64,000 nt of DNA from Octopus sinensis (taxonomy: Eukaryota): contig NC_043025.1 in NCBI RefSeq assembly GCF_006345805.1, positions 1,488,001-1,552,000 on the forward strand. Reading direction: 5' to 3'. Position numbers and translations under genes: made by a program. The notes beneath the pieces are model-generated. The model searched no databases. It was given only the letters and a program-made list of their open reading frames with translations, and had not been told where the DNA came from. Shown piece after piece: positions 24,306 to 46,406 of this stretch. Position 1 is the first letter of the stretch. Every line of letters starts with the position of its first letter.

Positions 24306-24352
<47 letters not shown>

Positions 24353-24354
24353 CA

Positions 24355-25045: not shown

Positions 25046-25129
25046 GACGAGGTTCTTCGCAATAATAGTGTAGCACAAAACGGCGGTGAATCAGCATGGC
25101 CGCAGCTCTGAGCTGAAGCAAACAAAACA

Positions 25130-25214
<85 letters not shown>

Positions 25215-25308
25215 TGTGTGTGTGTGTGCGTGCGTGTGTATGTATGTATGTATGTATGTGTGTATATATACATCTGCACACATGTACATATATAGAAGTA
25301 TATGTGTA

Positions 25309-25343
<35 letters not shown>

Positions 25344-25351
25344 CACAACAA

Positions 25352-25446
25352 TGAGGGTAAAATTAATTAATTATTAATCAATTTCACCAAGTATTCAATA
25401 CTGAATACTTGTGAAATTGATTAATAATTAATTAATTTTACCCTCA
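25352..25446. repeat. AT-rich ~95-bp hairpin
   Basis: tgagggtaaaattaatt...aattaattttaccctca; 1-nt bulge, 4-nt loop. Confidence 0.9.
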
Positions 25447-25673
25447 ATTGTTGAAATTATATTCATCTCTCTCTGTTTAATGCTGCGGTCTTCACCGATA
25501 AAATAGTGTTTGTCAATTTTAACCCACGCTGGTGGAAAGGGGAGAGCAGAATTTCTTCGCTTGCATATTTGAATTTGATAGCACTTTTAGTTCGAGCAGA
25601 ATTCTAGAGGTGATAAGAAGCCGAAAGGGTATGCTCCCACTTTCAGTGTTCCCAAATCCGATTCAAGGAATTC

Positions 25674-25725
25674 TGAGCTGACGAAAGAAATGTCGATTTG
25701 ACTAATCTAGAAACGTACGTTCTCA
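25674..25725 (+). ncRNA. Hammerhead-like motif in left-arm-only insertion
   Basis: TGAG-CTGACGA-..-GAAA-CGTACG-TT-CTCA; A/A mismatch at the base of stem II. Confidence 0.5.
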
Positions 25726-26702
25726 AATAACCTTTGCATTTGATTTTTTAATGTTTTTTCCCCCATACCTTGTGAGTTGGTTTAGGCAAACACTATCTGA
25801 GAGAGATCTTCTTTAAGTATTAGAAATAGCTGAAGAAATTTCTTTAGCTGCTATTTCTAATGAGTTCGGTATGTGGCAAAGTAATTTATTTTACTAAGCC
25901 CTTATATATAATATATATATATATATAATATATATATATAGATGTACATGTAATATGTACACATATATACACATATATACATGGATACATATATACACCC
26001 ATACACACATACACATACACACACATATATATATAATTATGGTGAAGGTGTGGCTGTGTGGTAACAAACTTGGTTCCAAACATATGGCCCTGGGTTCAGT
26101 CCCACTGTGTGGTGTCTTGGCATGCGTCTTCTGCTATAGCCTCAGACCAACCAAAGCCTTGTCAGTGGATTTTGTAAACAGAAACTGAAAGAAATCAATT
26201 GTTTATACATGTATGTATATATTTAAGTCTATGTGTGAGTATTTGTGTTTCTCCCTCATCACTGCTTCACAACTGGTGTTCGTTTATTTACATCCCCATA
26301 ACTTACTGGTTTTACAAGAAGAAACTGATAGAATAAGTACCAGGCTTATCAAATTTTAAAAAAAACACTAGACTGTGTCTCATATTCTTGTTTACCCACT
26401 CAGTTGTATCTATCAATTTATCTTTTTGTGTGTATATATATATATTTCAAAATGTGACCTCGTGTGTACCGTTGGAGATTTTTTTCCTCTGTCTTCCCTT
26501 CTCGGGATCTTTCCTTCTCCTATGTTTCTGACGAAGAGCTCTGCTCGAAACTTTAAACCCTCCGTCTTCCCTTCTTTCAATAATACTATATTTGTTCCAC
26601 GTCCTCGCGTTGTTGTGTTATTTTGTGTTTTCGTGTTTGGATTAACTATATATATATATATATATAAAGATATACCCATGTATGTATATGTGCATATTCA
26701 TA

Positions 26703-28387
26703 TCTATTATATCAAAGTCAATGTCTTTATGTGCGTTCGTGTGTTACTTATACCTTTGAAAACTGCTGCACCGATCCTAATGGAATTTCGAACAAAAAAT
26801 CCAAGCCTGGGGAGAAGGGTAATGCTGTGTGTTTCATACAATTTGATGGACCAAAATTATTGAATGGATCCTTATGATATTTGAAGCTTAGATTCAATGC
26901 ATAAGGGCAGGTATAATGCAATATGTTTAGTTTGAATTTCAGATGGCTTAAAGGGGGCAGAATCCCCATGAAAATTCATAAATTATCGATGTTCATGAAA
27001 TATCAACCATGGGTAATTGACACACATCAAGAAGTATTCTCAAAGTTTCCACTTCACATGAAGATTCCTAAGACACCCTAATGGGGGCCTTAACTCCCAA
27101 ATTTTAATCATTTCTTTTAGGATCCAAAACTAGGTCAAAAGTACTGAATGAATCTTTATGAAATTTGGAAATTATATTCTATGCATAAAGGCCATAACGC
27201 CCAGGAAAATTCATATATTATTGCTGTTGATGAAATTTTAACCATAGATATTAGACACAAATGAAGTAATGTTTATATAATTTCATCTTCTTACAAGTTA
27301 GAAAGACCCCTTCATGGGGACTTAACACCCACAATTTTGTCATTTTATCCAAGGAAAGACGAATAGTTGTTCTCTTGGAATCTGTGGGGTCATCCGAGCA
27401 TAAAAGATGAGCATTATTTGTAATTCAATGGTACAACAGTGTAAGAGATTGCTTTGACATACACTTAGATTGTGATTTCTGCAATGTGCTGCATAAATTG
27501 TCAAGTAAATGAGAGGCATCTTTGACTCCACTGATTCAGTTGCAAAGTGTTGAGTAAAGTTATTTGGTTGCAGACCGCCTTTCAGTCTTTTTATTATCAC
27601 TGGGTCACACATAGTCCCTAGATGGTAACATTGATTTCAAAGGCTTCCCAGATGAGTGACTGGTTATTCAAAGACATTTATGGTTCGTAAACTTATTCTG
27701 TCCAATTATGTATCATTATAGTGGTCATTTGCAAACTCCAGAGGTGACACTTTCATTTCTCCTTAGCCCTCACACCACACAGTTGTTAATATTTATTTGA
27801 GTTGGGTCACGCCCTTCCAATTGCTATAGATCCGTAATGCATCTTACGGTTGTGCCTGTCACCTGCATGGGGAGGAATACTACATTGGGAGAGGTAACGC
27901 CTAGGGTAGGGTAGCTGACTGCTTATTGTGATCATTCATCTTTTGGTTTCCTGTAGCTTTGCTCTCTTTTTCAAACCCAGTGAACATACATACATTTCCT
28001 ATTTCAAAGGAATTCAAACAATATATATAAGACCCAAGTTAAAAAGATTCTCAACAATTCGACTTCTCTGGTTGACATTAAGATACCCACCCCCAATAGG
28101 GGCCTTAACTCTCACATTTTAGAGCTCCATGACCTACATTTTTCAGGAGCAAAATCCTTTTAACAGGTTCTATAAGACTGGAATTTTGGAATCGGCGCAT
28201 ATAAATCAGTAGTATGGGATACATGTGATTACAATTTTTTTAGGGTGCGTAAAGAGGGAAAGAACCCTCATCTGCAATTTTGATGAAATTCGAAACATAG
28301 ATATTCCAGTTCATTACAGAAAATATACCAGAAAAGTCTAATTCTTCAATTGCATGTAACACGGGCAACGCCGGGTAACTCTGCTAG
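26703..28387 (+). mobile_element. Non-autonomous Helitron-like element
   Basis: A|TC 5' end (atctattat..., followed by gcaccgatcctaatggaattt), 3' GC stem acgggcaacgccgggt then CTAG|T; internal repeated modules; no TSD. Confidence 0.75.
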
Positions 28388-29020
28388 TTAATCCTAAAAT
28401 TAAATTGTAAAATTGAAATAGTTCTTAATTGCATTTTTAGTCCCCTGAATTCTTGTGTAACCACCCCCATTTTGGAAAGCCCTGGCCTAAACCACAATAA
28501 GACAAAGTGAGATAACCCTAGATACATCATATATTATATAGAAATACTATCTCTACATGATATATGAAGAGAAAAGACATCGATATATATATATATACAC
28601 ACATTTATTTATAGCAGACGTTCTACTCTAAGCTAGAAATAAAGGGAGATAATTATGAATATACGCGAGGATATTAAAACTGTTTTTAGAACAATAGAAG
28701 TGTTTAGGGAGGTGCTTAGGCATACAACAATAGCAACAACAACAACAAATGAACAGTTGAAAGTTTATCTTTATTTCAAAAGTTAATCTCTAACAACAGG
28801 GGAGACAAACCAGCAAAGGGATTTCTTTGTGATAGATAGATCTGCTAGAAGTAGTAGCCAAATCGACCACAATTCATACTTATCCCCTTAAAGAAGAATA
28901 CGCTGGACAATGTGTGTGTGGCTCCTGTACATTAAGAATAAAGTTAGGGTGGTCATGGCCGGAATGCATTTGATCATAAATTTCTGACCTGGGACTAAGC
29001 AACAACATTTATGCAGAAAT

Positions 29021-29223
29021 TCACTCTATTTCAATTAGACACATGAGGGCTTCATAGCACTCACATCTCTCAAGTGCTTCTCTGAGTGTTTCCAATGTAC
29101 GTTTCATTGGATCACAACACCTATACCATCTGAGGAGCATCTGAAAGCTCTGTTCTTCTGTGTTGTAGGGATAGTCATACCTGATCATCTCTAGTTCAAC
29201 TTGTCTAACTCCTAATTGCCTTC
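29021..29223 (-). CDS. Terminal coding exon of a death-domain (DD) protein: GRQLGVRQVELEMIRYDYPYNTEEQSFQMLLRWYRCCDPMKRTLETLREALERCECYEALMCLIEIE*
   Basis: Polypyrimidine tract plus ttttgcag acceptor (AG at 29225-29224), phase 1, 203 nt to TGA. Residue pattern LG..LG...I.......EQ...ML..W......T...L..AL matches the death-domain fold. Confidence 0.88.
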
Positions 29224-29419
29224 CTGCAAAAGATACAAAAAGAAGAAATAATTGCAACAACATTAACAATAACACGAAAGATATGAACCGTGGGTTGTAA
29301 TAAATATAACAAAGAAACTAGTAAACAAACATGAATAAGGTAAGACAAAGTTCTCTTTTTCTAAGAATGCTGATTAAAAAATAACAAAGTTGAAATAAGG
29401 TATAAAGATACTCATCATC

Positions 29420-32140
29420 ATTTAGGGCCTACTTTTCATGCCGGCATGGGTCAGACAGTTTAATTGAAACTGGTAAGCCAGAGAGCTGCACCAAGTTCCA
29501 GTCTTATTTGGCATGGTTTTTACAGTTGGATGCCCTTCCTAATGCCAACCACTCCAAAAGTGTAATAAGTACTTTTAATGTGCCACTGGCACAGGTGCCA
29601 GTTATGTGACACAAAGATCGACCACGAATATCATATTACTTGGCTTGAGGGGTCTTCTCAAACATGGCATATCGCCAAAGGTCTCCATCACTTATTATTG
29701 CTGTGATGAGGTGCTTCACCACCTCATGCCATGTCTTCTTGGGTCAGCTCCATCCACAGGTTTCCTCCCCATTTAGAGACAGGCACTTTTTTTACATCGG
29801 CTCCCCTCATCCAAATGCAGCACATGACCATAGCAGTGCATTTGTCTCTCTTGAACACCAGATCTGATGCCTCTCACTCCCAACTTATTTGTACTTGCAT
29901 ACTGACATTGCGCATCCACCAAAACATACTAGATTCATTTCTTTCAAGCCTACACATGTCCTCAGCAGTCACAGCCCATGTTTCACTGCCGTGTAGTATG
30001 GCTGTTTGCACAGAAGCATCATACAGTCTGCTTTTAATTCGGAGGGAGGGACTCTTTGTTACCAACAGAGGTAGGAGCTCTCTGAACTCTACCCAGTCTA
30101 TTCTTATTCTAGCAGCTATATTCTCAGAGCACCCACCTCCACTGCTGACTTGGTCACCCAGATAATGGAAGGTATACACTACTTATAAGTATTTGCCCTG
30201 CCATTTCATGGAATCTATTTTCTGTACATTTCTAGAATTTATTGAATCTGTGCACATTCCACACACAAAATCTATTTTCCCTGTTAACCTTCCTCTGATA
30301 TGGCTGCACCTCTTATGTGTCCATAGCTAACATTGGGTACATCTTAAGGAGTTTATACACCTTTTCTACAGATCTTGCAGGGCCATCAACCTAAAGAGCT
30401 GCATTCCTACTTACTAAGACTTTCATTTTTGCTAGATTAACTCTAAGGCTCCTTGATTCTATACCTTTTTTCCACAACTGAAATTTCTTTAGTTATGGAA
30501 ATGATTTGACTATAAGAAAAAGGTCATCAACATAGAGGAGCTCCTAGGGGAAGCCTTAAATTCCTCTGATATTATCTGGAGGACTATCATGAACAAGTGG
30601 CGGCTGAGGACCAATCCTTGGTGAACCTCTACTTGTTCCCTGAATTCATCACTATACTCGTTTCCAACCCTCACCTTACTGACAGCATCCGTGTACATGG
30701 CTCTCACCAACCACTCCTCTATCCCTGCTTTCCACATTGATCACCAGATAAGGGAGAGGGGAACCCTTTGAAGGTTTTCTCCATCTCAGCAAAAGACAAG
30801 TATAGAGGTTTCTCTTTGGCTATGTATTTCTCTTGCAGTTGCCCTGCCAGAAATATAGTATCAGTGGTGCTTCTCCCTGGCACAAAACCAAACTGCATCT
30901 CATCTAGACTAGCTCTCCTCCTAATTAGTTGAGCTCTGATCCTCTCCATAACTTTCATCACCTGATCCAGCAACTTGATACCTCTGTAATTATTTCTATC
31001 TAAGGCATCACTTTTACCTTTGTAGCAGTTGACTATGGTGCTGCTACACCAGTCATTGGGTATGGCTCCTTCGTGAAGCACCTGATTTACCTATGGGTGA
31101 CTAGATCATAACCCACACCACCAGATATTTTAAGCATCTCAGTGGGGATTCCTGATGAGCCAAGGGCTGTGCTGATCTTCATATCCTCCATGGCTTTAAC
31201 TACCATGTTACTGTCTAATCAAATTGCTGGTTCTCCTGTTGGATCCACATTAAGCAGACACTCCTTCTCCCATTAATTCTCTACATTAAGAAGCCTTTCG
31301 TGGTGGCACTTCCAAGCCTCTTTCTTTGCAGAGTCACTAACTGCAAGAGAATCATCGTCAATGCAAACACACTTCTCTCCAACAACACCACATTTTCCCC
31401 TGGCATACTGTTTTGTAAGACATTGGCAAATGTCTTCCTTTCTACTTCCCTTCTGGCTAAGTATACCTGCTTCTTAGCTTCCCTTCTTGCTGCCTGATAA
31501 AACTCTTTGTTACCACCATCCTTCCAGTACTTCCAAGCCTGTTTCTTTGTTCTAATAACCCTGTCAACTAACTGTACCACCACCATGTCACCCTAGACCT
31601 GGTTTGGACTTTGCATAAACCACTAATTGGTCTGTGACTCGCAGCAAATTGTTTCATAGAAACCTCCAGTTATCCTCTATTTTGCAAGGCTGTAGCCCCT
31701 CCTCCTTCTCATCAAATGCTTTAATTAGAACATCTCTAAATCTCTGGCTATTCAAAGAATCCTTAAGCTTCCATATCCTTCTCTTCCAAACTAGCTTGCT
31801 TCTTGGAATCCTTTGTGCCACTAACTTGAAGTCACTAATGAGTAACCCATGCTGAGGGGTATATTCTCCTCCAGGGAAGGACTTTGCATCTATGAGCAAC
31901 CATGATTACACCTTTCTGTAGTCAATCTTGCTAGCATGGTCACCAGATTTATAGGTTTTCGGGTGACTAGCTGGTTTTCTGAAGTTGGTGTTTCAAATCA
32001 GTAGCTCATCTGTATCACCGAACTCCAACGGCCTTGTTCCCTTCTCATTTTGGGAACCAATCCCATGGCTCCCATGCACCCTGAGGAAGACACCTGCTTG
32101 CTACCCGACAGGTTCATTGAAATCACCAGTTACAAAGGAA
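29420..32140 (-). mobile_element. RTE-clade LINE, decayed, in the last intron of the DD gene (partial mirror 41640-42600, +)
   Basis: QHGLLISDF (endonuclease), NYRGIKLLD, QFGFVPGRSTTDTIF, FHYLGD, ILHGSETWAVT. Confidence 0.88.
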
Positions 32141-33609
32141 AGTAACTGAAAATTATCGAGAAAATTAATGGTAAATAGATAGCAGGAAAAGTGTGTGTGT
32201 GTGTGTGTAGACAAAAGTGTTACTATTTGAGCCACTGTTCTGTTTTCTCTGCTTTCTATTCCTTGGTGGGTACTCAGGTACCTTCAACATGAAGCCCTAT
32301 CTAAAGCAATTATCATTAGACTTGGTGGCTTGATTCTCAACCATGACCAATTAAGGCGCTGTAGATATTATCCAACCACCTAGTTCTCAGTCTAACCCTA
32401 CGTCTCCTGCCACTTGGCTCAACTTGATGAATCTATTTTGCAGTTCTTTCCTGCAACATTCTAATCTGATATCTGTAGAAGCAGAGCTGTGGAGATTTAG
32501 TGGCCCAGCCTGGAGAAACTCCCAGATCTCTGAGCTGTGTGCATCCTTCTGAGTAACATTACTTCAGGGACCCTTTAGAGGATTTCCATTTCAGTTGCTT
32601 GGTATCATCACATGACAATGCCTGAAATAGTGTGATGCCTCTCCTCCTCTAATTAATACTTATAAAATATCAACTTCTAGAAACAGCTACAAAGTGGAGA
32701 TTGAAGTATGAAAGAATACCAGTAATATTAGGTACACCTGGACTAATTAAAATGGAAATGGACAGGACACAAAGTACAAAATATAATACTGTCAGGTACA
32801 CGTAACATACTTCTAGACTCGTAATAAGGATTTCTTTTACTGGACCAATGCCACAATTTAGAGAGAAGTCCGAGGTTTTAGAGTAAAGCTAACAATGAGA
32901 AGAGTTTTAGTTTTGTAGGAAAGAAGACGGGAGTCACCACCATCTACACCAAACACATGCAGACGCTTAGGGCCTGAAGGAATCACTGCATCTACCAACA
33001 TCTCCATCATCTGGGAAGTTACCATATTTGATAAGCAGGAAGGTAGAAGGGGTTAATAGGGATTCTATATGGTGTACTCAATGCACACAATAGGTGATGT
33101 GGGGTCAGAGCTGTAATCCCTACTGACAGATAAAGAATTCTCTTTCTGAATGAAGGGTAGATTGTATGAGGTATATTTCTAAAGTGCAGTGATGCATTGA
33201 ATGTGGAGGATGTATGAAAACTGGCAAGAAATGAGGTGAGAATACTTCACGAGAAGTGTAATGTTAGTATATAGGAATGCTGGAGAAAAGATGAGCTGGA
33301 AGAAAAACTGAGTTTCAGAAGAATCAGAGATTTTGCACAGGAGAGGAAATGATAAAAATATGGGAAGGATGTGGAAAAGGAAGTTTGGACCAAAAATTGA
33401 CAGAAAATGCAAGAGGAAGGACATTAGAGGTTAAACATGAACCAAACCAGGTTTTGGAGGAGGAGTTCACTAACACATTCAAACATAGAAAAATGGGCAT
33501 AAGATGAGGATGATGATAATGGACTATTTTCAAAGAATCGATTTTACCCCAGTATATGACTGGTACATTCTGTGTGATTCTCAAAGGTATAACACGTTGA
33601 CCATGTTAT

Positions 33610-35660
33610 AGATGATGTCTTCTCTCAATTTAGATAAAACATTTCTATCAGCTGACTGAGAGGATATTATGTTGACCCCCTGTGTCAGAGGCCAACAGTT
33701 CAAATCTAGTCCCTAGCAATGCTCTAGGTTCCTGGTAGAAACACCTCACTTTAGTACAGTTTACTTGGATGTAAATAGGTACAGTGGAGAGGTACAAACC
33801 ATTGCTGTAAATAACGGGAACTTTGTATAAGCGATATCTGATGTTGTTACACATTCAGACAAGGTGAAATGGAATGTTGTGATTTTCATGCCTTTCCAAA
33901 TGATATTTCTAATGTAAAGGGGAATGAAAGGAGTTCAAAGGAGAAATGGAATAGCAGTAGACTTAGTGACAATATAAAACAAACCAAAACTTTGTCATTA
34001 ACTCACCTGTCTACCCTTAAACAACATATTTTACTTTTCTCTTCCAAAAGATAATATTAACATTATTTGTGTTTTTTTTGTTTATCCATTATTACCAGCT
34101 CTTTGGATATTTTCTGGAATTTCAGTGATATCGATATGTTTAACTTTTGTTATTATACAGCTAACCTATCAATTAGACATTAGGAATGGAACCTGTTCTC
34201 AGTCATTTTAACAGACAGGTGAAAGTAATATTTATAGAAATCTTTTAGGTATTGTTATTCTATACTCACCCAGTTCCATCCATTTACCTCCTAATTTCTT
34301 AGCCACTCTGTGAAGATGCATCTCCGTCAGCATTACCCTCTCTGAAATAAATATTTCCAAAGTTTATAATTTATAGTAAAATTTCTTTATTTCTATAAAT
34401 AATCTAGGGTTTAACAGGCATTTCTATCAACAATGGTCAACTGGTGACCATTATGGCTTGGTCAATATTTTTATACTTTCTAATATACTAATATTAACTC
34501 TATTGTCTTCTGAATTGTCCATTTTATAAGCCATGCTAACCACGCTGGATATTTTCTGGAATTTCAGGAATATCAATATGTTTAATAGAATTATTATACA
34601 GCTAATCTTTCAATTGGGAATTAGGATGATGTCTTCTCTCAATTTAGATACATCATTTCTAACGACTGACCGAGAGGATATTATGTAGACCCCTGTGTCA
34701 CAGGTCAACAGTTCAAATCTAGCCCCAAGCACTGCTCTACGTTCCTGGTAGAAACATCTCACCTTAGTAAATGTTTAACTAGAGGGTAATCTTGAATTTT
34801 AACTGTCCCAATTCACAGGCCACCACTATGTCCTCTGAATCAGTTGATATTTGTTATGTAGAGAGGAATGAAAGGATTTCAAATGAGAAATGCAATATTG
34901 TGATGTTCATGCCTTTCCAAATGATATTTGCAATGCAAAGGGAAATGAAAGGGTTGTCTGAGGGGGTTTTGTCCTAGGGAGGTTTTGTCTGGGTCCCATA
35001 AATGGTGACTCTTTTACCTAGCCAAGATTTTGACTTTATTACTGTGACTTTTTTCTTGTGATTTCATTACTGGTCACCAGTTTTACAATTCTTTCTGTAT
35101 TCTATAACTGTCACATTTTAGAAACATTTCTCACGGCACCAGCACACTTTCCGTGAGTTTTTTACAAGTCCAGCTAGTATTTTATTATTGTGAGATATTC
35201 CTGTGATCAATGGTCAACTGGTGACCAATGTGTTTTTTGACACTATTTTTATATTTTCTACAGTAGAACCACCACAGAATAGACTAACCTTCCTAAACCT
35301 CTTCTCTCAAGTAAGATATTCTACATAATCCTAACAATATAGCAATTATCTTCTTTATCACTACCAGATGAAAATACTATTCTAGTTTTCTTTTTCTAGT
35401 CTTGTACCTGTACAAAATCAATGACAAGTATTTCTACTCTAACTTCTAGAATTCCGTAACCGACATTCTTCTAATTTGCAGCTTAATTCGAATGTCAATC
35501 AAGTCGGTCCTCCAAAGATCTAGCCACAATATCATGACACACCTCTTGAAATAAGACAAAACATACACCTGATCTCTTTGTTGAAGGTTGCTGCCTGCAA
35601 TCTTTTATTTTAACTGTCCCACATCACAGGTCAAGACTATGTCCTCTGAAGCAAGAAATA
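33610..35660. repeat. Older, diverged relics of the same duplicated intron unit (33611~34625; 34430~35208~38020; 35300-35660~38130-38480)
   Basis: Shared diverged blocks, e.g. gatgatgtcttctctcaatttagata and caatggtcaactggtgacc. Confidence 0.7.
34270..34341 (-). CDS. 72-nt internal exon encoding the DD N-terminal helices: (K)RVMLTEMHLHRVAKKLGGKWMEL(G)
   Basis: Acceptor aaatatttatttcag and donor GTGAGT, phase 1-1. Splices in frame to 29223, giving ...KLGGKWMELG|RQLG..., the canonical DD W..LG..LG motif. Confidence 0.88.
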
Positions 35661-35829
35661 TTTGGATGTCTTTCATCTTCCTTAATGACTCTACCCAGGT
35701 GGAGCAGGGGATGATGACAGGTATCCCAAAAATGCTTCAGTATAATTGCACAAAACTTCATCAACTACACATCCCTCTCCCTACCCGCATTATTGCACTG
35801 AAAATACTTTAAATGCTACACAGGAAGCG

Positions 35830-37130
35830 AGACTCAAACAAACATAAAGACGATCGGGATAGACACCAAGCAGCAATCCCCAGATCTTGTATTTGCCCAC
35901 AAGCTTTGTCTTATCTATTGCTTGTAACCAATCCTCAGTTTGTGCCATCATCTGAATGCCTCTACTCTCACTCAACAACATAGCTTAACATCGTCCTAAA
36001 CATTTTACAGGACAGTCTTTAACATTTGGCATGGATTCTTCTGCAAATTGGAACTTCACTTGCTTCAGGGGATCTTTCATAAATGGCAGACTGAATTATT
36101 TATTTGCTTGAAACCCCTTTACTCACCAAGTACCTAGCCAGTCCACAAGTAATTGCATATCCTTTTCGTCTGTTTTTAGCTTGGTTATGTCATTCGTTAA
36201 GGCCTTCTTATGCGATTGCCATTCGGATCAATCTACTGATCAATGTAACTTATCCATAAAAAGCACAAACTAAATGACGGACATTGTACAACCTACAGTA
36301 ATTCCATTTCCAAGAAAATGCCAGTCTGTTGTGAAGTCTGCTGTTATTAGCCGTGTTATGAAACTGTTGCATTTGACTCCTAATTAGATCTGTCATCTTC
36401 TCCAGTTTATAAAATCGATTACTGCCATCAGCAATTTCTGTTGTAGAGAAACATAAGCAGGAACTGGATAGAGCCATACAACATTCAAATCTCTTTTATT
36501 CTCCATTTTCTCTCCTATGGCATTCCATGTGGAAAATGGATGTTCCATATGCCCAGGAATTTAGAAGATTCTAGTCTTATGCACACTCTCAGTCCCATAG
36601 CAAAATTATTTTATAGGTTTGTAGCTGATCTGATAACAAGTACATCTATGTAAATGTTGCCGTCTACTTTTACAATTGAAATGGGTCTCAACTGGTCGCT
36701 TAGTTCTGCTTTAGCATCCTCTGGTAAGTAAACTCTGCCTGCCTTGCACCAATCATCAACCAGTTCGCCAATAAGCCACAGCTCTCTCACTCTTGGTACA
36801 GCTTATAATTCAATTGAGTACAGTACTTGTACTTGCACTCTAAACTTTTGTCTTCTTCATTAAAATTATACACTTCTGTCTTGCTGAAACCACCAAGCTG
36901 AAATTTCATTGCTGCTCACATTGGCTGCTTCAAACTAGCCATGAGTGGAAACTGTTGACGTCGCTTTCGCTCACTCAAGGTTTCCTGTATATTCCTAGCT
37001 TTGCTGCACTTTAGCTGGCTGATTTTAACATCTGCAAACTGCTTTCAAGATAAGGGCCCTTAATGAGAAACTCTCTAATTTGTTTAACCTCTGAGATCTC
37101 TTTGCATAGGTTAGAGAGGAACAGTTATTC
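35830..37130 (-). mobile_element. Degenerate Hero/NeSL-like RLE non-LTR retrotransposon RT fragment (unit 1)
   Basis: Frameshifted motifs GRVYLPEDAK..DQLRPISIVKVDGNI, DLNVVWL, GITVGCTMSVI, VKCLGR, AIDKTKLVGKYKIW. Confidence 0.75.
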
Positions 37131-37881
37131 TTCTTGAGGACATAACAATGTTTCTAGTGCTTGTAGCAGAATAAAATGTATCAAGAACCCTTTAGAATAT
37201 GGTAGAAATTAGGAATAGCAAAACAGCACGAGTAAGTTAGAACGTTTAAATGAAATGTATTCTCCAAGGAAGGAAGTTGGGCAGTACCTCTGAATAAAAT
37301 CTCACTTGGACATTGACCACCCATCAAAAACATGGCAACATGGAAAGCAGATGATAAATAATGAGCACAATATCAGAGATTGTATTGTGTCTTATACTTG
37401 AACAGAGACAGAGAGTAAGAGACTGCGCTTATCTCAGAAGCAAACCAAACTCTTGCACTTGCATATGAACAATGAATTTAATAATAGATTTACTATCAGT
37501 GCAAAATGATATGGAATTTTATATGGGAACACTTTCAATCTTAAGTCTGCCAGAATATGGCATGAGGCTGAACAACAACAATAAACTATCATAAAAATAT
37601 AAAACAAACAAAAACAATATGCTTAGCTCATTTGTTTACCCCTAAACAACAACATAATTTATTCTCCTATTCCAAAAGGCATTATTAACCATATTGTCTC
37701 TGCTAATCTCAGCGGTTATCCCTGAAAGTTCAGTAACTCTCTTTAATATTATTAATTTAAGGTTAACCTTTCAAGTGGAAATTACAAATGGAACCTGACC
37801 TTACTCAATCTGACAAACCAAGAAACTCAGGTGAAGGCAACATTTACAGAAATCAATAAATTCTTGTTATTTAATACTCAC

Positions 37882-37935
37882 TTCTTGCGCTATGTGCCAC
37901 TTGCTGGTCTTCCTTGTCTTCTACTTTTGGAGTTG
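37882..37935 (-). CDS. 54-nt micro-exon, repeat unit B: (A)TPKVEDKEDQQVAHSAR(K)
   Basis: Acceptor aaatatttatttcag, donor GTGAGT, length divisible by 3, phase 1-1, no stop, in frame with the 72-nt exon. Confidence 0.75.
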
Positions 37936-38659
37936 CTGAAATAAATATTTCTCATTATAGTATAATTTGGTTAATTATCCTAATAATCTATATTCTATTA
38001 TTGTGAAACTTTTCTATCATCAATGTTCCACAAATGACCGCTATGGGTTTGGTCAACATTTTCATACTTGCTACAGTGGTACCAAAACAAACGAAAGTAA
38101 CCTTCCTGAACCTCTTTCTTCTACTAAGACATTCTGCATAATCCTATCTTTGTAGCCATTATCTTATTTAATTATTACCACTTGACAATAATTCTTTTCT
38201 ACTTTTGTCTTTCCTGTCTTATATCTCTGCCAAATCAATGGCATGGCATTCTTCACTCACCTCTCGACTTCACTAACAAGCATCCTTCGTACTTCCTGCT
38301 TTACTGCAATATCAATCAAAATGGTCCTCCAAAGATCTACATACAAAATCACGACACACCCCATCAAGCAGGATGAACATACACCTGCTCTCTTTAATGA
38401 ACTTTGCTAACGGTTATCTTTAATGTCAACTGTTCCACAGAGCAAATCACCGGGATATTCCCTGGATGGAAAAACAGTTGAAGACATTTGGATGTCATTC
38501 ATCTTCCTTAATGACTCTACCCAGGTGGAGCAGGGGATGATGACAGGTATCCCAAAAATGCTTCAGTATAATTGCACAAAACTTCATCAACTACACATCC
38601 CTCTCCCTACCCGCATTATTGCACTGAAAATACTTTAAATGCTACACAGGAAGCGAGAC

Positions 38660-39960
38660 TCAAACAAACATAAAGAAGATCGGGATAGACACCCAGCAGC
38701 AATCCCCAGATCTTGTATTTGCCCACACGCTTTGTCTTATCTATTGCTTGTAACCAATCCTCAGTTTGTGCCATCATCTGAATGCCTCTACTCTCACTCA
38801 ACAACATAGCTTAACATCGTCCGAAACATTTTACAGGACAGTCTTCAACATTTGGCATGGATTCTTCTGCAAATTGGAGCTTCACTTGCTTCAGGGGATC
38901 TTTCATAAATGGTAGACTGAATTATTCATTTGCTTGAAACCCCTTTACTCACCAAGTACCTGGCCAGTCCAGAAGTAATTGCATATCCTTATCGTCTGTT
39001 TTTAGCTTGGTTATGTCATTCGTTAAGGCCTTCTTATGCGATTGCCATTCGGATCAATCTACTGATCAATGAAACTTATCCATAAAAGGCACAAACTAAA
39101 TGACGGACATTGTACAACCTACAGTAATTCCATTTCCAAGAAAATGCCAGTCTGTTGTGAAGTCTGCTGTTATTAGCCGTGTTATGAAACTGTTGCAGTG
39201 ACTCCTAATTAGATCTGTCATCTTCTCCAGTTTATAAAATCGATTACTGCCATCAGCAATTTCTGTTGTAGAGAAACATAAGCAGGAACTGGATAGAGCC
39301 ATACAACATTCAAATCTCTTTTATTCTCCATTTTCCCTCCTATGGCATTCCATATGGAAAAGGGATGTTCCATATGCCCAGGAATTTAGAAGATTCTAGT
39401 CTTATGCACACTTTCAGTCCCATAGCAAAATTATTTTATAGGTTTGTAGCTGATCTGATAACAAGTACATCTATGTAAATGTTGCCGTCTACTTTTACAA
39501 TTGAAATGGGTCTCAACTGGTCGCTTAGTTCTGCTTTAGCATCCTCTGGTAAGTAAACTCTGTCTGCCTTGCACCAGTCATCAACCAGTTCGCCAATAAG
39601 CCACAGCTCTCTCACTCTTGGTACAGCTTATAATTTAATTGAGTACAGTACTTGTACTTGCACTCTAAACTTTTGTCTTCTTCATTAAAATTATACACTT
39701 CTTTCCAGCTGAAACCACCAATTTGAAATTTCATTGCTGCTCAATTGGCTGCTCCAAACTAGCCATGAGTGGAAACGGTTGACGTCGCTTTGGCTCACTC
39801 AAGGTTTCCTGTATATTCCTAGCTTTGCTGCATTTTAGCTGGCTGATTTTAACATCTGCAAACCGCTTTCAAGATAAGGGCCCTTAATGAGAAACTCTCT
39901 AATTTGTTTAACCTCTGAGATCTCTTTGCATAGGTTAGAGAGGAACAGTTATTCTTCTTG
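38660..39960 (-). mobile_element. Degenerate Hero/NeSL-like RT fragment (unit 2, duplicated passively with the array)
   Basis: Paralogue of 35830-37130. Confidence 0.75.
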
Positions 39961-40720
39961 AGGACATAACAATGTTTCTAGTGCTTGTGTCAGAATATAA
40001 TGTATCAAAAACCCTTTAGAATATGGTAGGAATCAGGAATAGAAAACAGCACGAGTAAGTTAGAACGTTTAAATGAAATATAATCTCCAAGGAAGGAAGT
40101 TGGGCAGTACCTCTGAATAAAAACTCACTTGGACAGTGACCACCCATCCAAAACATGGCAACATGGAAAGCAGATGATAAATAATGAGCACAATATCGGA
40201 GATTGTATTGTTTCTTATAGCCAGTATCCACCTTGAACAGAGAGAGAGAGAGAGAAAGAGACTGCGCTTATCTCAGAAGCAAACCAAACTCTTGCACTTG
40301 CATATGAACAATGAATTTAATAATAGATTTACTATCAGTGCAAAATGATATGGAATTTGATATGGGAACACTTTCCATCTTAAGTCTGCCAGAATATGGC
40401 ATGAGGCTGAACAACAACAATAAACTATCAGAAAAATATAAAACAAACAAAACCACTGTGCTTAGCTCATTTGTTTACCCCTAAACAACAACATAATTTA
40501 TTCCCCTATTCCAAAAGACATTATTAACCATATTACCTCTGCTAAACTCAGCGATTATCCCTGAAAGTTCAGTAACTCTCTTTAATATTATTAATTTAAG
40601 GTTAACCATTCAAGTGGAAATTACAAATGGAACCTGACCTTACTCAATCTGACAAACCAAGAAACTCCGGTGAAGGCAACATTTACAGAAAACAATAAAA
40701 TCTTGTTATTTAATACTCAC

Positions 40721-40774
40721 CGATTGCGCTATGTGCCACTTGCTGGTCTTCCTTGTCATCTACTTTTAGAGGTT
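40721..40774 (-). CDS. 54-nt micro-exon, repeat unit A: (x)PLKVDDKEDQQVAHSAI(A)
   Basis: Paralogue of 37882-37935, 2,839 bp away, with the same splice signals, phase 1-1 and an open frame. Confidence 0.72.
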
Positions 40775-41539
40775 CTGAAATAAATATTTCTCATTATAGT
40801 ATAATTTGGTTAATTATCTTAATAATCTATATTCTATTATTGTGAAACTTTTCTTCCATCAATGTTCCACAAATGACCGCTATGGGTTTGGACAACATTT
40901 TCATACTTGCTACAGTGGTACCAAAACAAACGAAAGTAACCTTCCTAAACCTCTTTCTTCTACAAAGACATTCTGCATAATCCTATCTTTGTAGCCATTA
41001 TCTTATTTAATTATTACCACTTGACAATAATTCCTTTCTACTTTTGTCTTTCCTGTCTTATATCTCTGCCAAATCAATGGCATCGCATTCTTCACTCACC
41101 TCTCGACTTCACTAACAAGCATCCTTCTTACTTCCTGCTTTACTGCAATATCAATCAAAATGGTCCTCCAAAGATCTACATACAAAATCCTGACACACCC
41201 CATCAAGCAGGATGAACATACACCTGCTCTCTTTAATGAACTTTGCTAACGGTTATCTTTAATGTCAACTGTTCCACAGAGCAAATCACCGGGATATTCC
41301 CTGAATGGAAAAACAGTTGAAGACATTTGGATGTCATTCATCTTCCTTAATGACTCTACCCGGGTGGAGCAGGGGATGATGACAGGTATCCCAAAAATGC
41401 TTCAGTATAATTGCACAAAACTTCATCAACTACACATCCCTCTCCCTACCCGCATTATTGCACTGAAAATACTTTAAATGCTACACAGGAAGCGAGACTC
41501 AAACAAACATAAAGAAGATCGGGATAGACACCCAGCAGC

Positions 41540-41639
41540 NNNNNNNNNNNNNNNNNNNNNNNNNNNNNNNNNNNNNNNNNNNNNNNNNNNNNNNNNNNNN
41601 NNNNNNNNNNNNNNNNNNNNNNNNNNNNNNNNNNNNNNN
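41540..41639. other. Assembly gap (100 N)
   Basis: Run of Ns. Confidence 0.99.
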
Positions 41640-42796
41640 AAGATCTGTAGAAAAGGTGTAGGTAGAAACTCCTTAAGATGTACCCAATGTTAGCTATGGA
41701 CACATAAGAGGTGCAACAATATCAGAGGAAGGTTAACAGGGAAACTAGATTTTGTGTGTGGAATGTGCACAGATTCAATAAATTCTAGAAATGTACAGAA
41801 AATAGATTCCATGAAATGGCAGGGCAAATACTTATAAGTAGTGTATACCTTCCATTATCTGGGTGACCAAGTCAGCAGTGGAGGTGGGTGCTCTGAGAAT
41901 ATAGCTGCTAGAATAAGAATAGACTGGGTAGAGTTCAGAGAGTTCCTACCTCTGTTGGTAACAAAGAGTCCCTCCCTCCGAATTAAAAGCAGACTGTATG
42001 ATGCTTCTGTGCAAACAGCCATACTACACGGCAGTGAAACATGGGCTGTGACTGCTGAGGACATGTGTAGGCTTGAAAGAAATGAATCTAGTATGTTTTG
42101 GTGGATGCGCAATGTCAGTATGCAAGTACAAATAAGTTGGGAGTGAGAGGCATCAGATCTGGTGTTCAAGAGAGACAAATGCACTGCTATGGTCATGTGC
42201 TGCATTTGGATGAGGGGAGCCGATGTAAAAAAAGTGCCTGTCTCTAAATGGGGAGGAAACCTGTGGATGGAGCTGACCCAAGAAGACATGGCATGAGGTG
42301 GTGAAGCACCTCATCACAGCAATAATAAGTGATGGAGACCTTTGGCGATATGCCATGTTTGAGAAGACCCCTCAAGCCAAGTAATATGATATTCGTGGTC
42401 GATCTTTGTGTCACATAACTGGCACTTGTGCCAGTGGCACATTAAAAGTACTTATTACACTTTTGGAGTGGTTGGCATTAGGAAGGGCATCCAACTGTAA
42501 AAACCATGCCAAATAAGACTGGAACTTGGTGCAACTCTCTGGCTTACCAGTTTCAATTAAACTGTCTGACCCATGCTGGCATGAAAAGTAGGCCCTAAAT
42601 GATGATGAGTATCTTTATACCTTATTTCAACTTTGTTATTTTTTAATCAGCATTCTTAGAAAAAGAGAACTTTGTCTTACCTTATTCATGTTTGTTTACT
42701 AGTTTCTTTGTTATATTTATTACAACCCACGGTTCATATCTTTCGTGTTATTGTTAATGTTGTTGCAATTATTTCTTCTTTTTGTATCTTTTGCAG

Positions 42797-42999
42797 GAAG
42801 GCAATTAGGAGTTAGACAAGTTGAACTAGAGATGATCAGGTATGACTATCCCTACAACACAGTAGAACAGAGCTTTCAGATGCTCCTCAGATGGTATAGG
42901 TGTTGTGATCCAATGGAACGTACATTGGAAACACTCAGAGAAGCACTTGAGAGATGTGAGTGCTATGAAGCCCTCACGTGTCTAATTGAAATAGAGTGA
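42797..42999 (+). CDS. Second copy (paralogue or allele) of the DD terminal exon: GRQLGVRQVELEMIRYDYPYNTVEQSFQMLLRWYRCCDPMERTLETLREALERCECYEALTCLIEIE*
   Basis: Intact ttttgcag acceptor at 42791-42796, open to TGA at 42997-42999, 200/203 identical to 29021-29223. Its upstream exons are not in the window (N gap). Confidence 0.8.
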
Positions 43000-43244
43000 A
43001 TTTCTGCATAAATGTTGTTGCTTAGTCCCAGGTCAGAAATTTATGATCAAATGCATTCCGGCCATGACCACCCTAACTTTATTCTTAATGTACAGGAGCC
43101 ACACACACATTGTCCAGCGTATTCTTCTTTAAGGGGATAAGTATGAATTGTGGTCGATTTGGCTACTACTTCTAGCAGATCTATCTATCACAAAGAAATC
43201 CCTTTGCTGGTTTGTCTCCCCTGTTGTTAGAGATTAACTTTTGA

Positions 43245-43250
43245 AATAAA
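43245..43250 (+). promoter_or_regulatory. Candidate polyadenylation signal AATAAA of the DD gene (mirror at 28770-28775, -)
   Basis: AATAAA about 250 nt after the stop in both copies. The sequence is AT-rich, so a chance match is possible. Confidence 0.3.
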
Positions 43251-43632
43251 GATAAACTTTCAACTGTTCATTTGTTGTTGTTGTTGCTATTGTTGTATGC
43301 CTAAGCACCTCCCTAAACACTTCTATTGTTCTAAAAACAGTTTTAATATCCTCGCGTATATTCATAATTATCTCCCTTTATTTCTAGCTTAGAGTAGAAC
43401 GTCTGCTATAAATAAATGTGTGTATATATATATATATCGATGTCTTTTCTCTTCATATATCATGTAGAGATAGTATTTCTATATAATATATGATGTATCT
43501 AGGGTTATCTCACTTTGTCTTATTGTGGTTTAGGCCAGGGCTTTCCAAAATGGGGGTGGTTACACAAGAATTCAGGGGACTAAAAATGCAATTAAGAACT
43601 ATTTCAATTTTACAATTTAATTTTAGGATTAA

Positions 43633-45319
43633 CTAGCAGAGTTACCCGGCGTTGCCCGTGTTACATGCAATTGAAGAATTAGACTTTTCTGGTATATTTT
43701 CTGTAATGAACTGGAATATCTATGTTTCGAATTTCATCAAAATTGCAGATGAGGGTTCTTTCCCTCTTTACGCACCCTAAAAAAATTGTAATCACATGTA
43801 TCCCATACTACTGATTTATATGCGCCGATTCCAAAATTCCAGTCTTATAGAACCTGTTAAAAGGATTTTGCTCCTGAAAAATGTAGGTCATGGAGCTCTA
43901 AAATGTGAGAGTTAAGGCCCCTATTGGGGGTGGGTATCTTAATGTCAACCAGAGAAGTCGAATTGTTGAGAATCTTTTTAACTTGGGTCTTATATATATT
44001 GTTTGAATTCCTTTGAAATAGGAAATGTATGTATGTTCACTGGGTTTGAAAAAGAGAGCAAAGCTACAGGAAACCAAAAGATGAATGATCACAATAAGCA
44101 GTCAGCTACCCTACCCTAGGCGTTACCTCTCCCAATGTAGTATTCCTCCCCATGCAGGTGACAGGCACAACCGTAAGATGCATTACGGATCTATAGCAAT
44201 TGGAAGGGCGTGACCCAACTCAAATAAATATTAACAACTGTGTGGTGTGAGGGCTAAGGAGAAATGAAAGTGTCACCTCTGGAGTTTGCAAATGACCACT
44301 ATAATGATACATAATTGGACAGAATAAGTTTACGAACCATAAATGTCTTTGAATAACCAGTCACTCATCTGGGAAGCCTTTGAAATCAATGTTACCATCT
44401 AGGGACTATGTGTGACCCAGTGATAATAAAAAGACTGAAAGGCGGTCTGCAACCAAATAACTTTACTCAACACTTTGCAACTGAATCAGTGGAGTCAAAG
44501 ATGCCTCTCATTTACTTGACAATTTATGCAGCACATTGCAGAAATCACAATCTAAGTGTATGTCAAAGCAATCTCTTACACTGTTGTACCATTGAATTAC
44601 AAAAAATGCTCATCTTTTATGCTCGGGTGACCCTACAGCTTCCAAGAGTACAACTGTATTTGTCTTTGCTTAGATAAAATGACAAAATTGTGGGTGTTAA
44701 GTCCCCATGAAGGGGTCTTTCTAACTTGTAAGAAGATGAAATTATATAAACATTACTTCATTTGTGTCTAATATCTATGGTTAAAATTTCATCAACAGCA
44801 AAAATATATGAATTGTCATGGGGGGTTATGGCCCTTATGCATAGAATATAATTTCCAAATTTCATAAAGATTCATTCAGTACTTTTGACCTAGTTTTGGA
44901 TCCTAAAAGATATGACTAAAATTTGGGAGTTAAGGCCCCCATTAGGGTGTCTTAGAATCTTCATGTGAAGTGGAAACTTTGAGAATACTTCTTGATGTGT
45001 GTCAATTACCCATGGTTGAAATTTCATGAACATCGATAATTTATGAATTTTCATGGGGGTTCTGCCCCCTTTAAGCCATCTGAAATTCAAACCAAACATA
45101 TTGCATTATACCCGCCCTTATGCATTGAATCTAAGCTCCAAATATCATAAGGATCCATTCAATAATTTTGGTCCATCAAATTGTATGAAACACACAGCAT
45201 TACCCTTCTCCCCAGGCTTGGATTTTTTGTTCGAAATTCCATTAGGATCGGTGCAGCAGTTTTCAAATGTATAAATACCACACGAACGCACATAAAGACA
45301 TTGACTTTGATATAATAGA
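43633..45319 (-). mobile_element. Non-autonomous Helitron-like element, mirror copy
   Basis: Reverse complement of 26703-28387. Confidence 0.75.
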
Positions 45320-45352
45320 TATGAATATGCACATATACATACATGTGTATAT

Positions 45353-45428
<76 letters not shown>

Positions 45429-45432
<4 letters not shown>

Positions 45433-45638
45433 ATCCAAACAAGAAAACACAAAAAAACACAACAACGCGAGGACGTGCAACAAATATAGTATTATTGGAC
45501 GCTCAGGAAAGAAGGGAAGACGGAAGGTTTAACGTTTCGAGCGGAGCTCTTCGTCGGAAACATAGGAGAAAAAAGATCCCGAGAAGGGAAGACAGAGGAA
45601 AAAAATCGCCAACGGTACACATGAGGTCACATTTTGAA

Positions 45639-45679
<41 letters not shown>

Positions 45680-46365: not shown

Positions 46366-46406
<41 letters not shown>

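What the first reader, a model, noticed from the sequence alone, without database searches (positions are those of the whole stretch)
29021..40774. Hidden death-domain gene built from a tandem array of 54-nt micro-exons
Seen: four minus-strand exons with canonical AG/GT sites, all phase 1, splice into one open frame: xPLKVDDKEDQQVAHSAI-ATPKVEDKEDQQVAHSAR-KRVMLTEMHLHRVAKKLGGKWMELG-RQLGVRQVELEMIRYDYPYNTEEQSFQMLLRWYRCCDPMKRTLETLREALERCECYEALMCLIEIE*. Only the last exon appears in the ORF track. Established: C-terminal death domains (FADD/CRADD/PIDD/ankyrin-type fold) mediate apoptotic and innate-immune adaptor assembly. Inference: this is an immune or apoptosis adaptor whose linker is made of 18-aa repeats, each encoded by one symmetric exon in a 2.84-kb genomic repeat. 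Linker length could therefore vary by unequal crossover and by frame-preserving exon skipping. I cannot assign an orthologue.
Basis: partly seen in the sequence, partly recalled or inferred. Interest (0 to 1): 0.85.

Follow-up and report, generated by a model that had tools for sequence, protein, structure and literature searches.

The report
Octopus RING–death-domain ligase, micro-exon linker
The four exons are real, but they are the tail of an octopus "MIB2-like" ubiquitin-ligase gene (ankyrin repeats, RING finger, death domain) that a scaffolding break cut in two; its short repeat exons are a trait of a large, already annotated octopus gene family.

Summary
Observation confirmed. Exons 40721-40774, 37882-37935, 34270-34341 and 29021-29223 (minus strand) have AG/GT sites and phase 1.

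It is not a small stand-alone adaptor. The window's contig ends at 41539 inside the 2.8-kb repeat. Unplaced contig C8315 starts at the very next base of the repeat register. C8315 carries a third 54-nt exon, a RING exon and ankyrin exons, giving one 332-aa open frame. RefSeq already models that 5' half as XP_036354722.1, "MIB2-like, partial" (Octopus sinensis).

The genome holds at least 126 such death-domain exons. Paralogues have 0-7 repeats of 17-18 aa, one exon each. One paralogue has 21 RefSeq isoforms that differ only in which cassette exons are included.

New here:
- The repeat exons are duplicates of the exon for death-domain helix 1.
- Their intron flanks (about 75% identical between paralogues) are more conserved than the exons (52%).
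- AlphaFold models the linker of a paralogue as disordered.

This is a new member of a known kind, of moderate interest.

The parts
29021..29223 (-). Terminal coding exon: most of the death domain plus the TGA stop (29021-29023).
   Evidence: AG acceptor and open frame. Pfam Death. Best genomic match of the DD query. Closest solved relative is the RIPK1 death domain, E=3e-8.
29224..34269 (-). Last intron (5,046 nt). It holds decayed reverse-transcriptase fragments.
   Evidence: RVT_1 fragment at 30722-31087. Intron sequence 33000-33600 is 66-82% identical to introns of paralogue loci.
34270..34341 (-). 72-nt phase-1 exon: first exon of the death domain (helix 1 and the start of helix 2).
   Evidence: AG/GT sites. 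tblastn to family proteins. The corresponding exon of a paralogue forms the first DD helix in the AlphaFold model.
37882..37935 (-). 54-nt cassette exon A (ATPKVEDKEDQQVAHSAR).
   Evidence: AG/GT, phase 1-1. Found by the family splice-flank pattern.
40721..40774 (-). 54-nt cassette exon B (xPLKVDDKEDQQVAHSAI).
   Evidence: AG/GT, phase 1-1.
35174..41539 (.). Tandem repeat: unit A 35174-37987, unit B 37988-40826, and the first 713 bp of unit C (40827-41539). Unit C continues at base 1 of unplaced contig C8315.
   Evidence: Self-BLAST gives 92.9% over 3.5 kb. C8315 1-2638 is 96.5-96.7% identical to both units. The virtual junction aligns without gaps.
37827..37995 (-). Exon A with its conserved intron flanks, about 60 nt upstream and 55 nt downstream. 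Equivalent flanks lie at 40666-40834 (exon B) and 34215-34401 (72-nt exon).
   Evidence: Alignments A2 and A3. Flank statistics.
41540..41639 (.). 100-N scaffold join that cuts the gene inside repeat unit C.
42797..42999 (+). Second copy of the terminal death-domain exon, in the inverted arm. It has an AG acceptor and an open frame, and differs at 3 nucleotides, all nonsynonymous.
10133..30376 (.). Arm 1 of a 20-kb inverted duplication. It contains the terminal exon.
41640..62054 (.). Arm 2 of the inverted duplication. It starts at the first base after the N run. Substitutions against arm 1 run from 0.9% (inner 3.7 kb) to 7% (outer end).

Best explanation
The finding is the 3' third of one Octopus sinensis gene. 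The gene belongs to an Octopus family that RefSeq names 'E3 ubiquitin-protein ligase MIB2-like/MIB1-like'. The family architecture is ankyrin repeats, one C3HC4-type RING finger, a linker of 17-18-aa repeats, and a C-terminal death domain (DD).

In this gene the linker is encoded by three 54-nt phase-1 cassette exons. Two are in the window and the third is on unplaced contig C8315. Each sits at the head of a ~2.8-kb tandem unit. These exons are paralogues of the 72-nt exon that encodes DD helix 1, and arose by tandem duplication of that exon together with its intron flanks.

The gene looks truncated only because the original contig was cut at window base 41539. Its continuation (C8315) was left unplaced, and a related stretch of DNA was joined on in inverted orientation.

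Likely mechanism (inferred): the DD docks the protein onto death-domain assemblies, and its closest solved relative is the RIPK1 DD. The RING ubiquitylates components there, and the ankyrin repeats add substrate contacts. The disordered repeat linker sets the reach between RING and DD. That length changes over evolutionary time by unequal crossover, and in the transcript by frame-preserving inclusion or skipping of cassette exons under control of the conserved intron flanks.

Shown here: exon structure, domain identities, continuity with C8315, family membership, isoforms of a paralogue, and flank conservation. Inferred: ligase activity, an immune or apoptotic role, and alternative splicing in this particular gene.
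For: - Exons and frame. Pfam Death 48.5 bits.
- The genome is 2.72 Gb in 13,516 contigs and has at least 126 DD-exon matches, most sharing the same intron position.
- Family proteins show ANK + RING + N repeats + DD.
- In an O. vulgaris paralogue each repeat is one 51-nt exon with the same TATTTCAG|...|GTGAGTA flanks.
- C8315 carries exons for ANK, a mid region, the RING and a third 54-nt exon. All have AG/GT and fitting phases, and with the window exons they give a 332-aa open frame.
- The composite scores Death 46.5 bits, zf-C3HC4_3 33.6 bits (cut-off 27), and Ank.
- RefSeq XP_036354722.1 on C8315 equals these exons at 100%, including the RING-to-54-nt junction.
- Window 41440-41539 joined to C8315 1-100 aligns gap-free to unit B (197/200) and unit A (196/200).
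- 21 isoforms of a paralogue (421-484 aa) differ only in four cassette exons and a 5-aa alternative acceptor.
- The 72-nt and 54-nt units share flanks. The downstream local score is 48 against a shuffle maximum of 28 (z=13.8). The upstream score is 39 against 36 (z=4.9). The exons differ by one 18-nt indel.
- Between paralogues, identity is 52% for exons and 74-75% for flanks (83% in the last 30 nt before the exon). It is 39% further than 55 nt downstream of the exon.
- Within a locus, micro-exon identity averages 78%; between loci it averages 56%.
- AlphaFold with a 20-sequence alignment of a paralogue gives ANK and DD mostly pLDDT 84-97 and six DD helices. The linker has pLDDT 27-54 and no helices.
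- The DD is closest to RIPK1, CRADD, ankyrin-3 and TRADD among solved structures.
Against: - No transcript data could be consulted, so none of the window's junctions is directly observed.
- The closest O. vulgaris model (CAI9744532.1) splices the RING exon straight to a terminal DD exon. It has no repeats and no DD exon 1.
- In the scaffold as deposited, the other copy of the 5' half (C29:1426887-1433089, + strand) converges on the window's exons rather than being collinear with them.
- The RING has Asp where the family has the His zinc ligand (PCGDKVIC).
- I could not read C29:1441001-1488000, so the contig layout to the left of the window is incomplete.
- Function rests on domain homology only.
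Confidence: 0.85

Rival explanations
1. The window holds an orphan, non-functional 3' fragment. A real inverted segmental duplication copied the gene's tail, and the exons stay open only because the duplication is young.
For: In the deposited scaffold no 5' exons lie upstream on the minus strand. A 20-kb inverted duplicate starts right after the gap. The region is rich in decayed retroelements. Arm divergence (0.9-7%) exceeds that of the C8315/C29 pair (0.4%), which argues for a true duplication.
Against: C8315 continues the window's contig at the exact base of the repeat register and carries the missing RING and ANK exons in frame. All nine exons are open with canonical splice sites. RefSeq models the 5' half.
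Confidence: 0.07
2. The gene is as described, but in this copy the 54-nt exons are never, or almost never, included. The mature mRNA joins the RING exon to the death-domain exons directly.
For: Every exon here is phase 1-1, so skipping keeps the frame. The closest O. vulgaris model lacks the repeats. Isoform X22 of a paralogue has no repeat.
Against: The RefSeq model on C8315 includes the first 54-nt exon. The three exons keep open frames, strong splice sites and conserved flanks. The O. vulgaris model spans 126 kb, and by my count from the, 70 sequences its DD exon is only about 70% identical, so it may be chimeric.
Confidence: 0.08
3. One reading: a small stand-alone death-domain adaptor (FADD/CRADD-like) made only of a repeat linker and a death domain.
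For: Some database proteins of the family are short, at 95-154 aa.
Against: The first 54-nt exon starts in phase 1 with no ATG or first exon in the window. The RING exon ends in phase 1 and is joined to a 54-nt exon in RefSeq. No CARD or DED domain was found.
Confidence: 0.03

Closest known systems
Octopus sinensis RefSeq 'E3 ubiquitin-protein ligase MIB2-like' genes, e.g. XP_036355683.1 and isoforms X1-X22; XP_036354722.1 (partial) is this gene's own 5' half
   Same: ANK + zf-C3HC4_3 RING + 17/18-aa repeats, one phase-1 micro-exon each, + a DD split at the same intron. The splice flanks match. Family members also lie on C29, the window's own chromosome-scale scaffold.
   Different: This copy has 54-nt rather than 51-nt repeat exons. 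Its repeats lack cysteines. The repeat period is 2.8 kb, against 166 bp in one O. vulgaris paralogue. The RING has Asp at the His ligand. The 3' half appears in no protein of 69-581 aa in the searched collection.
Vertebrate Mind bomb 2 (MIB2)
   Same: An ankyrin-repeat block followed by a C3HC4_3 RING. MIB2 binds oligomeric RIPK1 and ubiquitylates it, including lysines in its death domain (PMC5912950). The octopus proteins may reach such assemblies through a RIPK1-like DD of their own.
   Different: Pfam reported no Mib/Herc2 or ZZ (MZM) domain in the family proteins scanned. The REP region of MIB2 has no dedicated Pfam test here. There is one RING, and a DD that MIB proteins lack. The RefSeq name reflects ANK+RING similarity, not orthology.
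Death domains of RIPK1, CRADD/RAIDD, ankyrin-3, TRADD and PIDD
   Same: Full-length sequence match: RIPK1 6ac5 at E=3e-8 over residues 4-89 of 91. The paralogue model has six helices.
   Different: No kinase, CARD, ZU5/UPA or LRR partner domain. The identity is low, and orthology to any of these is not implied.
Titin PEVK exons, schistosome micro-exon genes (MEGs), and the 54-bp exons of fibrillar collagen
   Same: Tandemly duplicated short symmetric exons, each encoding one peptide repeat, where differential inclusion changes protein length. MEGs have exons of 3-81 bp (bioRxiv 10.1101/2023.06.21.545858). PEVK exon duplication and differential splicing are described in PMC6469411. The collagen comparison is from general knowledge.
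   Different: Here there are only 0-7 exons. They form a disordered tether between two signalling domains of a cytosolic E3 ligase. They derive from an exon of the adjacent folded domain. There is no sequence relationship to these other genes.

Membership tests
Death domain superfamily (Pfam PF00531) | Sequence scores above the curated Pfam gathering threshold over the whole domain. | tested here: met
   48.5 bits against 22.6, profile positions 2-82 of 86. The 332-aa composite scores 46.5 bits.
Death domain superfamily (Pfam PF00531) | Six-helix bundle fold. | tested here: inconclusive
   Six helices at block-mean pLDDT 84-94 in the AlphaFold model of paralogue XP_036355683.1. The window's own spliced protein could not be submitted for folding.
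Death domain superfamily (Pfam PF00531) | Homotypic DD-DD oligomerisation. | not testable with these tools
   Needs binding assays.
Octopus ANK-RING-repeat-DD ('MIB2-like') family | Ankyrin repeats N-terminal to the RING. | tested here: met
   C8315 exons at 38348-38312 and 28871-28662. Pfam Ank_2, Ank_4 and Ank hit the composite. The rest of the N-terminus was not read.
Octopus ANK-RING-repeat-DD ('MIB2-like') family | A single zf-C3HC4_3 RING immediately before the repeats. | tested here: met
   33.6 bits against a cut-off of 27. Zinc ligand 4 is Asp instead of His, which is shared with the closest O. vulgaris protein.
Octopus ANK-RING-repeat-DD ('MIB2-like') family | Linker of 17-18-aa repeats, each on its own phase-1 exon with the TTTCAG|...|GTGAGTA flanks. 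| tested here: met
Octopus ANK-RING-repeat-DD ('MIB2-like') family | DD split by a phase-1 intron after helix 1 at the family position. | tested here: met
   Most genomic DD-exon matches start at query residue 24-25. tblastn exon boundaries agree.
True Mind bomb (MIB1/MIB2) orthologues | N-terminal Mib/Herc2-ZZ-Mib/Herc2 (MZM) module and REP repeats. | tested here: not met
   Pfam reported no Mib/Herc2 or ZZ domain in the family proteins scanned, which include members starting with Met: P0017, P0018 and P0053. REP repeats were not specifically tested. The domain map of MIB2 is in PMC5912950.
True Mind bomb (MIB1/MIB2) orthologues | Two or three C-terminal RING fingers and no death domain. | tested here: not met
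   One RING followed by a DD.
   None of these domains appears in Pfam scans of the composite or of family members.
Schistosome-type micro-exon genes (MEG) | Most of the coding sequence is built of micro-exons, and the product is secreted. | tested here: not met
   Only 3 of at least 9 coding exons are micro-exons. The product has cytosolic signalling domains. It works like an MEG in one respect only: symmetric cassette exons.

The most novel reading that the evidence does not exclude
The Octopus-specific ANK-RING-DD family may use its cassette micro-exons as a regulated generator of combinatorial diversity in immune or cell-death signalling. The exons are copies of the DD helix-1 exon, and they are framed by intron elements more conserved than the exons themselves. 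Each gene would produce up to 2^n linker isoforms across dozens of rapidly duplicating paralogues. This would be a cephalopod counterpart of Dscam or MEG-type splicing diversity, applied to an intracellular E3 ligase.
Probability: 0.2. Interest if true: 0.65.

Novelty: new member of a known kind. Interest (0 to 1): 0.4.

Why it matters
For annotation, the result shows that a scaffolding cut inside a tandem repeat split a gene. One half became a 'partial' RefSeq protein on an unplaced contig. The other half has no protein model in the size range searched. It also shows how to rejoin the two halves.

For biology, it points to a large Octopus-restricted family (at least 126 DD exons) that fuses a MIB-like ANK-RING ligase module to a RIPK1-like death domain. 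The two are joined by a disordered tether whose length is set by duplicable, skippable micro-exons.

I found no paper describing this family. The intron flanks are conserved more strongly than the exons, and one paralogue has 21 annotated isoforms. Together these make regulated linker-length splicing a directly testable idea in cephalopod innate immunity.

Tried and rejected
- Word-indexed homologue search with the 126-aa spliced peptide found nothing. The length filter and word index hide the longer relatives. The exhaustive HMMER search and a 332-aa composite query solved this.
- RNA structure as the reason for flank conservation: RNAalifold on 12 exon units gave -1.22 kcal/mol and one weak, mostly G-U helix. 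Rejected.
- Single-sequence AlphaFold of a paralogue gave pLDDT 41 and was unusable. It was repeated with a 20-sequence alignment.
- A recent transposon insertion as the origin of the 2.8-kb unit: the unit interior is shared at 66-71% with paralogue loci, so it is old family intron sequence. Rejected.
- Tandem units as assembly stutter: the aligned parts of the C8315 unit differ from units A and B by about 3%, and units A and B are 92.9% identical to each other, so they are distinct copies. Rejected.
- Fetching the O. vulgaris locus to count units failed because the gene range is 126 kb.
Only 1426887-1441000 was read.
- Four literature searches found no description of the family.
Full report
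**1. Checking the observation**

Each is preceded by AG, and the first three are followed by GT.

The 34-nt core of the 54-nt exon occurs twice without mismatch; 100 shuffles gave none. Pfam Death (PF00531) matches residues 43-122 at E=9.8e-13, 48.5 bits against a cut-off of 22.6. That match runs across the junction between the 72-nt exon and the terminal exon.

Two details need correcting. Only two 54-nt exons are in the window. The tandem units are 2,814 and 2,839 bp long (35174-37987 and 37988-40826). A third unit is cut after 713 bp by a 100-N run at 41540-41639.

**2. Context in the window**

A self-comparison shows a 20-kb inverted duplication. Arm 1 is 10133-30376 and includes the terminal exon. 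Arm 2 is 62054-41640 and begins at the first base after the N run. Substitution divergence is 0.9% in the inner 3.7 kb and 1.5-7% further out.

A second intact copy of the terminal exon therefore lies on the plus strand at 42797-42999. It differs at three nucleotides, all nonsynonymous. On the minus strand, nothing upstream of 40774 in the window can supply a 5' end.

**3. Which genome and which family**

The window is C29:1488001-1552000 of a 2.72-Gb assembly in 13,516 contigs.

The death-domain (DD) query finds at least 126 places in this genome, and most begin at the same intron position. An exhaustive HMMER search with the terminal exon found 51 representatives. Every close hit whose source I looked up is from an Octopus species.

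The sequences and Pfam scans give one architecture: ankyrin repeats, one zf-C3HC4_3 RING, then 0-7 repeats of 17-18 aa, then a C-terminal DD. Examples of the repeats are VCPKSEDKAVQAVVESV and ECPRCREKTVKTVAESF. RefSeq names these proteins 'E3 ubiquitin-protein ligase MIB2-like', 'MIB1-like' or 'ankyrin-3-like'.

In an O. vulgaris paralogue every repeat is its own 51-nt exon with the flanks TATTTCAG|...|GTGAGTA. There the array period is only 166 bp.

**4. The missing half of the gene**

A search with the 54-nt exon and its flanks found a third close copy on the unplaced 40,968-bp contig C8315. C8315 bases 1-2638 are 96.5-96.7% identical to the window's repeat units.

Further along its minus strand, C8315 carries these exons:
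- the third 54-nt exon at 2072-2019;
- a RING exon at 8313-8171;
- a mid-region exon at 12238-12066;
- ankyrin exons at 28871-28662 and 38348-38312.

All have AG/GT sites and compatible phases. Joined to the window's four exons, they give one 332-aa open frame. That composite scores Death 46.5 bits, zf-C3HC4_3 33.6 bits (cut-off 27), and Ank.

RefSeq XP_036354722.1 ('MIB2-like, partial', 252 aa, on C8315) is 100% identical to these five C8315 exons. This includes the splice from the RING exon into the 54-nt exon. After that the model runs into unrelated sequence, because the contig ends.

The decisive point is the register of the repeat. The window's contig ends at unit offset 713, and C8315 starts at offset 714. 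A virtual junction of window 41440-41539 plus C8315 1-100 aligns without any gap to unit B (197/200) and unit A (196/200). C8315 is therefore the cut-off continuation of the window's contig.

The array consists of exactly three full units (three 54-nt exons) plus the tail of a fourth unit. Unique intron sequence then leads up to the RING exon.

**5. State of the assembly**

A second, 99.3-99.5% identical copy of the C8315 sequence lies on C29 at 1426887-1433089 on the plus strand. It ends at another 100-N run, at 1433090-1433189. The sequence just beyond that gap is unrelated.

So each gene half is present twice:
- the 5' half as C8315 and as the C29 plus-strand copy;
- the 3' end as arm 1 (minus strand) and arm 2 (plus strand).

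The simplest reading, which is inference, is two haplotypes or two very young copies. One would be C8315 plus the window's contig. The other would be the C29 5' half plus arm 2. The window's contig would then have been inserted between the parts of the second copy in reverse orientation.

I could not read C29:1441001-1488000. I therefore cannot exclude a real inverted duplication. The closest O. vulgaris model spans 126 kb and jumps from the RING exon to a terminal DD exon. That structure is what a gene finder would produce on such an arrangement.

No protein of 69-581 aa in the searched collection contains the window's exons. 'Hidden' is therefore true for the 3' half only.

**6. Origin and behaviour of the micro-exons**

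The 72-nt exon (DD helix 1) and the 54-nt exons are paralogous units. Their intron flanks align: the downstream local score is 48 against a shuffle maximum of 28 (z=13.8), and the upstream score is 39 against 36 (z=4.9). The exons themselves differ by one 18-nt indel at the 3' end.

A simple pattern, T[TC]TCAG-(3n)-GT[GA]AGTA open in phase 1, finds only these exons in the window. In C8315, three paralogue loci and the other loci scanned it likewise picks out the repeat exons and DD exon 1, plus two longer linker exons of 66 and 72 nt.

Nucleotide identity between paralogues is as follows:

| Region | Identity |
|---|---|
| Exons | 52% |
| 60 nt upstream | 75% |
| Last 30 nt upstream | 83% |
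| 55 nt downstream | 74% |
| Further than 55 nt downstream | 39% |

The flanks are thus under stronger constraint than the coding part. This is the usual signature of regulated cassette exons. An RNA-structure explanation found no support.

Within a locus the micro-exons are 78% identical on average (81-94% in this gene). Between loci they are 56% identical.

Exon skipping is documented in the RefSeq annotation of a paralogue. Twenty-one RefSeq isoforms (421-484 aa) are identical except for every combination of four cassette exons (17, 12, 17 and 17 aa) and a 5-aa alternative acceptor of DD exon 1.

**7. How it probably works**

Among solved structures the DD is closest to RIPK1 (E=3e-8, full length), then CRADD, ankyrin-3, TRADD and PIDD. 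AlphaFold with a 20-sequence alignment of a paralogue gives confident ankyrin and DD modules, with six DD helices at block-mean pLDDT 84-94. The RING is of moderate confidence. The repeat linker is a coil with pLDDT 27-54.

I infer a RING E3 ligase that is recruited by its DD to death-domain assemblies. A disordered tether sets how far the RING can reach, and its length is adjustable in evolution and by splicing. Mammalian MIB2 binds and ubiquitylates oligomeric RIPK1, including lysines in its DD (PMC5912950). The octopus proteins may achieve the same targeting by carrying a DD of their own.

The RING of this copy has Asp in place of the His zinc ligand. The closest O. vulgaris protein shares this, so activity needs testing.

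**8. Comparison with what is known, and novelty**

This is a member of the annotated Octopus 'MIB2-like' family (all four tested features met). It is not a true Mind bomb orthologue: Pfam found no Mib/Herc2 or ZZ module, there is one RING, and a DD is present. It is not a FADD, CRADD, PIDD or ankyrin-type adaptor, because no DED, CARD or ZU5 domain was found.

In design the linker resembles titin PEVK exons, schistosome micro-exon genes and the 54-bp exons of collagen. There is no sequence relationship (the collagen comparison is from general knowledge).

I found no paper on this family. The gene itself is an ordinary new member of a known kind. The family-level features are the part worth following up: a helix-1-derived cassette array, flanks more conserved than exons, combinatorial isoforms, and restriction to Octopus in these searches.

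Noticed in passing
window 10133-30376 and 41640-62054: A 20-kb inverted duplication whose second arm starts at the first base after the N run. Substitution divergence rises from 0.9% at the inner end to 7% at the outer end. Homology continues beyond the window: C29:1560097-1561575 matches window 7668-6193.
   Followed up: partly
window 42797-42999 (+): The second copy of the terminal death-domain exon is intact. It differs from the first at 3 nucleotides, all nonsynonymous (E>V, K>E, M>T), while 30 nt of flank on each side are identical. At two of these sites copy 2 carries the residue seen in the O. vulgaris relative.
   Followed up: partly
C8315 8313-8171 (RING exon of the same gene; not in the window): The fourth zinc ligand of the RING is Asp (PCGDKVIC) where paralogues have His (PCxH). 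The closest O. vulgaris protein has the same change, so it is not a private defect.
   Followed up: partly
window 45355-46908 versus 25903-26712: A ~730-745-bp segment is tandemly duplicated in arm 2 but single in arm 1. It is flanked by TA/CA microsatellites.
   Followed up: no
window 14366-14854(+), 22705-23265(+), 30722-31087(-), 58645-59037(-), 62088-62615(-): Decayed retroelement fragments (integrase core, RVT_1, RT RNase H) are scattered through both arms and through the last intron of the gene. All are broken into short frames.
   Followed up: partly
loci L025/L026 (C12769:40001-60000) and L027/L028 (C29:254001-274000): The unplaced contig C12769 and C29:254-274 kb carry nearly the same paralogue with identical micro-exon peptides. 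This looks like another retained duplicate or haplotig in this assembly.
   Followed up: no
O. vulgaris CAI9744532.1 (P0053), GCA_951406725.2: The closest O. vulgaris model spans 126 kb, skips the repeat exons and DD exon 1, and is only about 70% identical in the DD exon against 88% upstream (the 70% is my count from the, 70 sequences). It may be a chimeric model, or may reflect the same inverted arrangement.
   Followed up: partly
C29:1600094-1699482 (outside the window): Several further RING and DD exons of the family lie 50-150 kb to the right of the window on both strands. The window therefore sits in a cluster of paralogues.
   Followed up: no
window 774-1168, 5849-6666, 17695-18372 and mirrored sites: Long TA, CA and related microsatellite tracts produce spurious long open frames in all six frames.
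   Followed up: no
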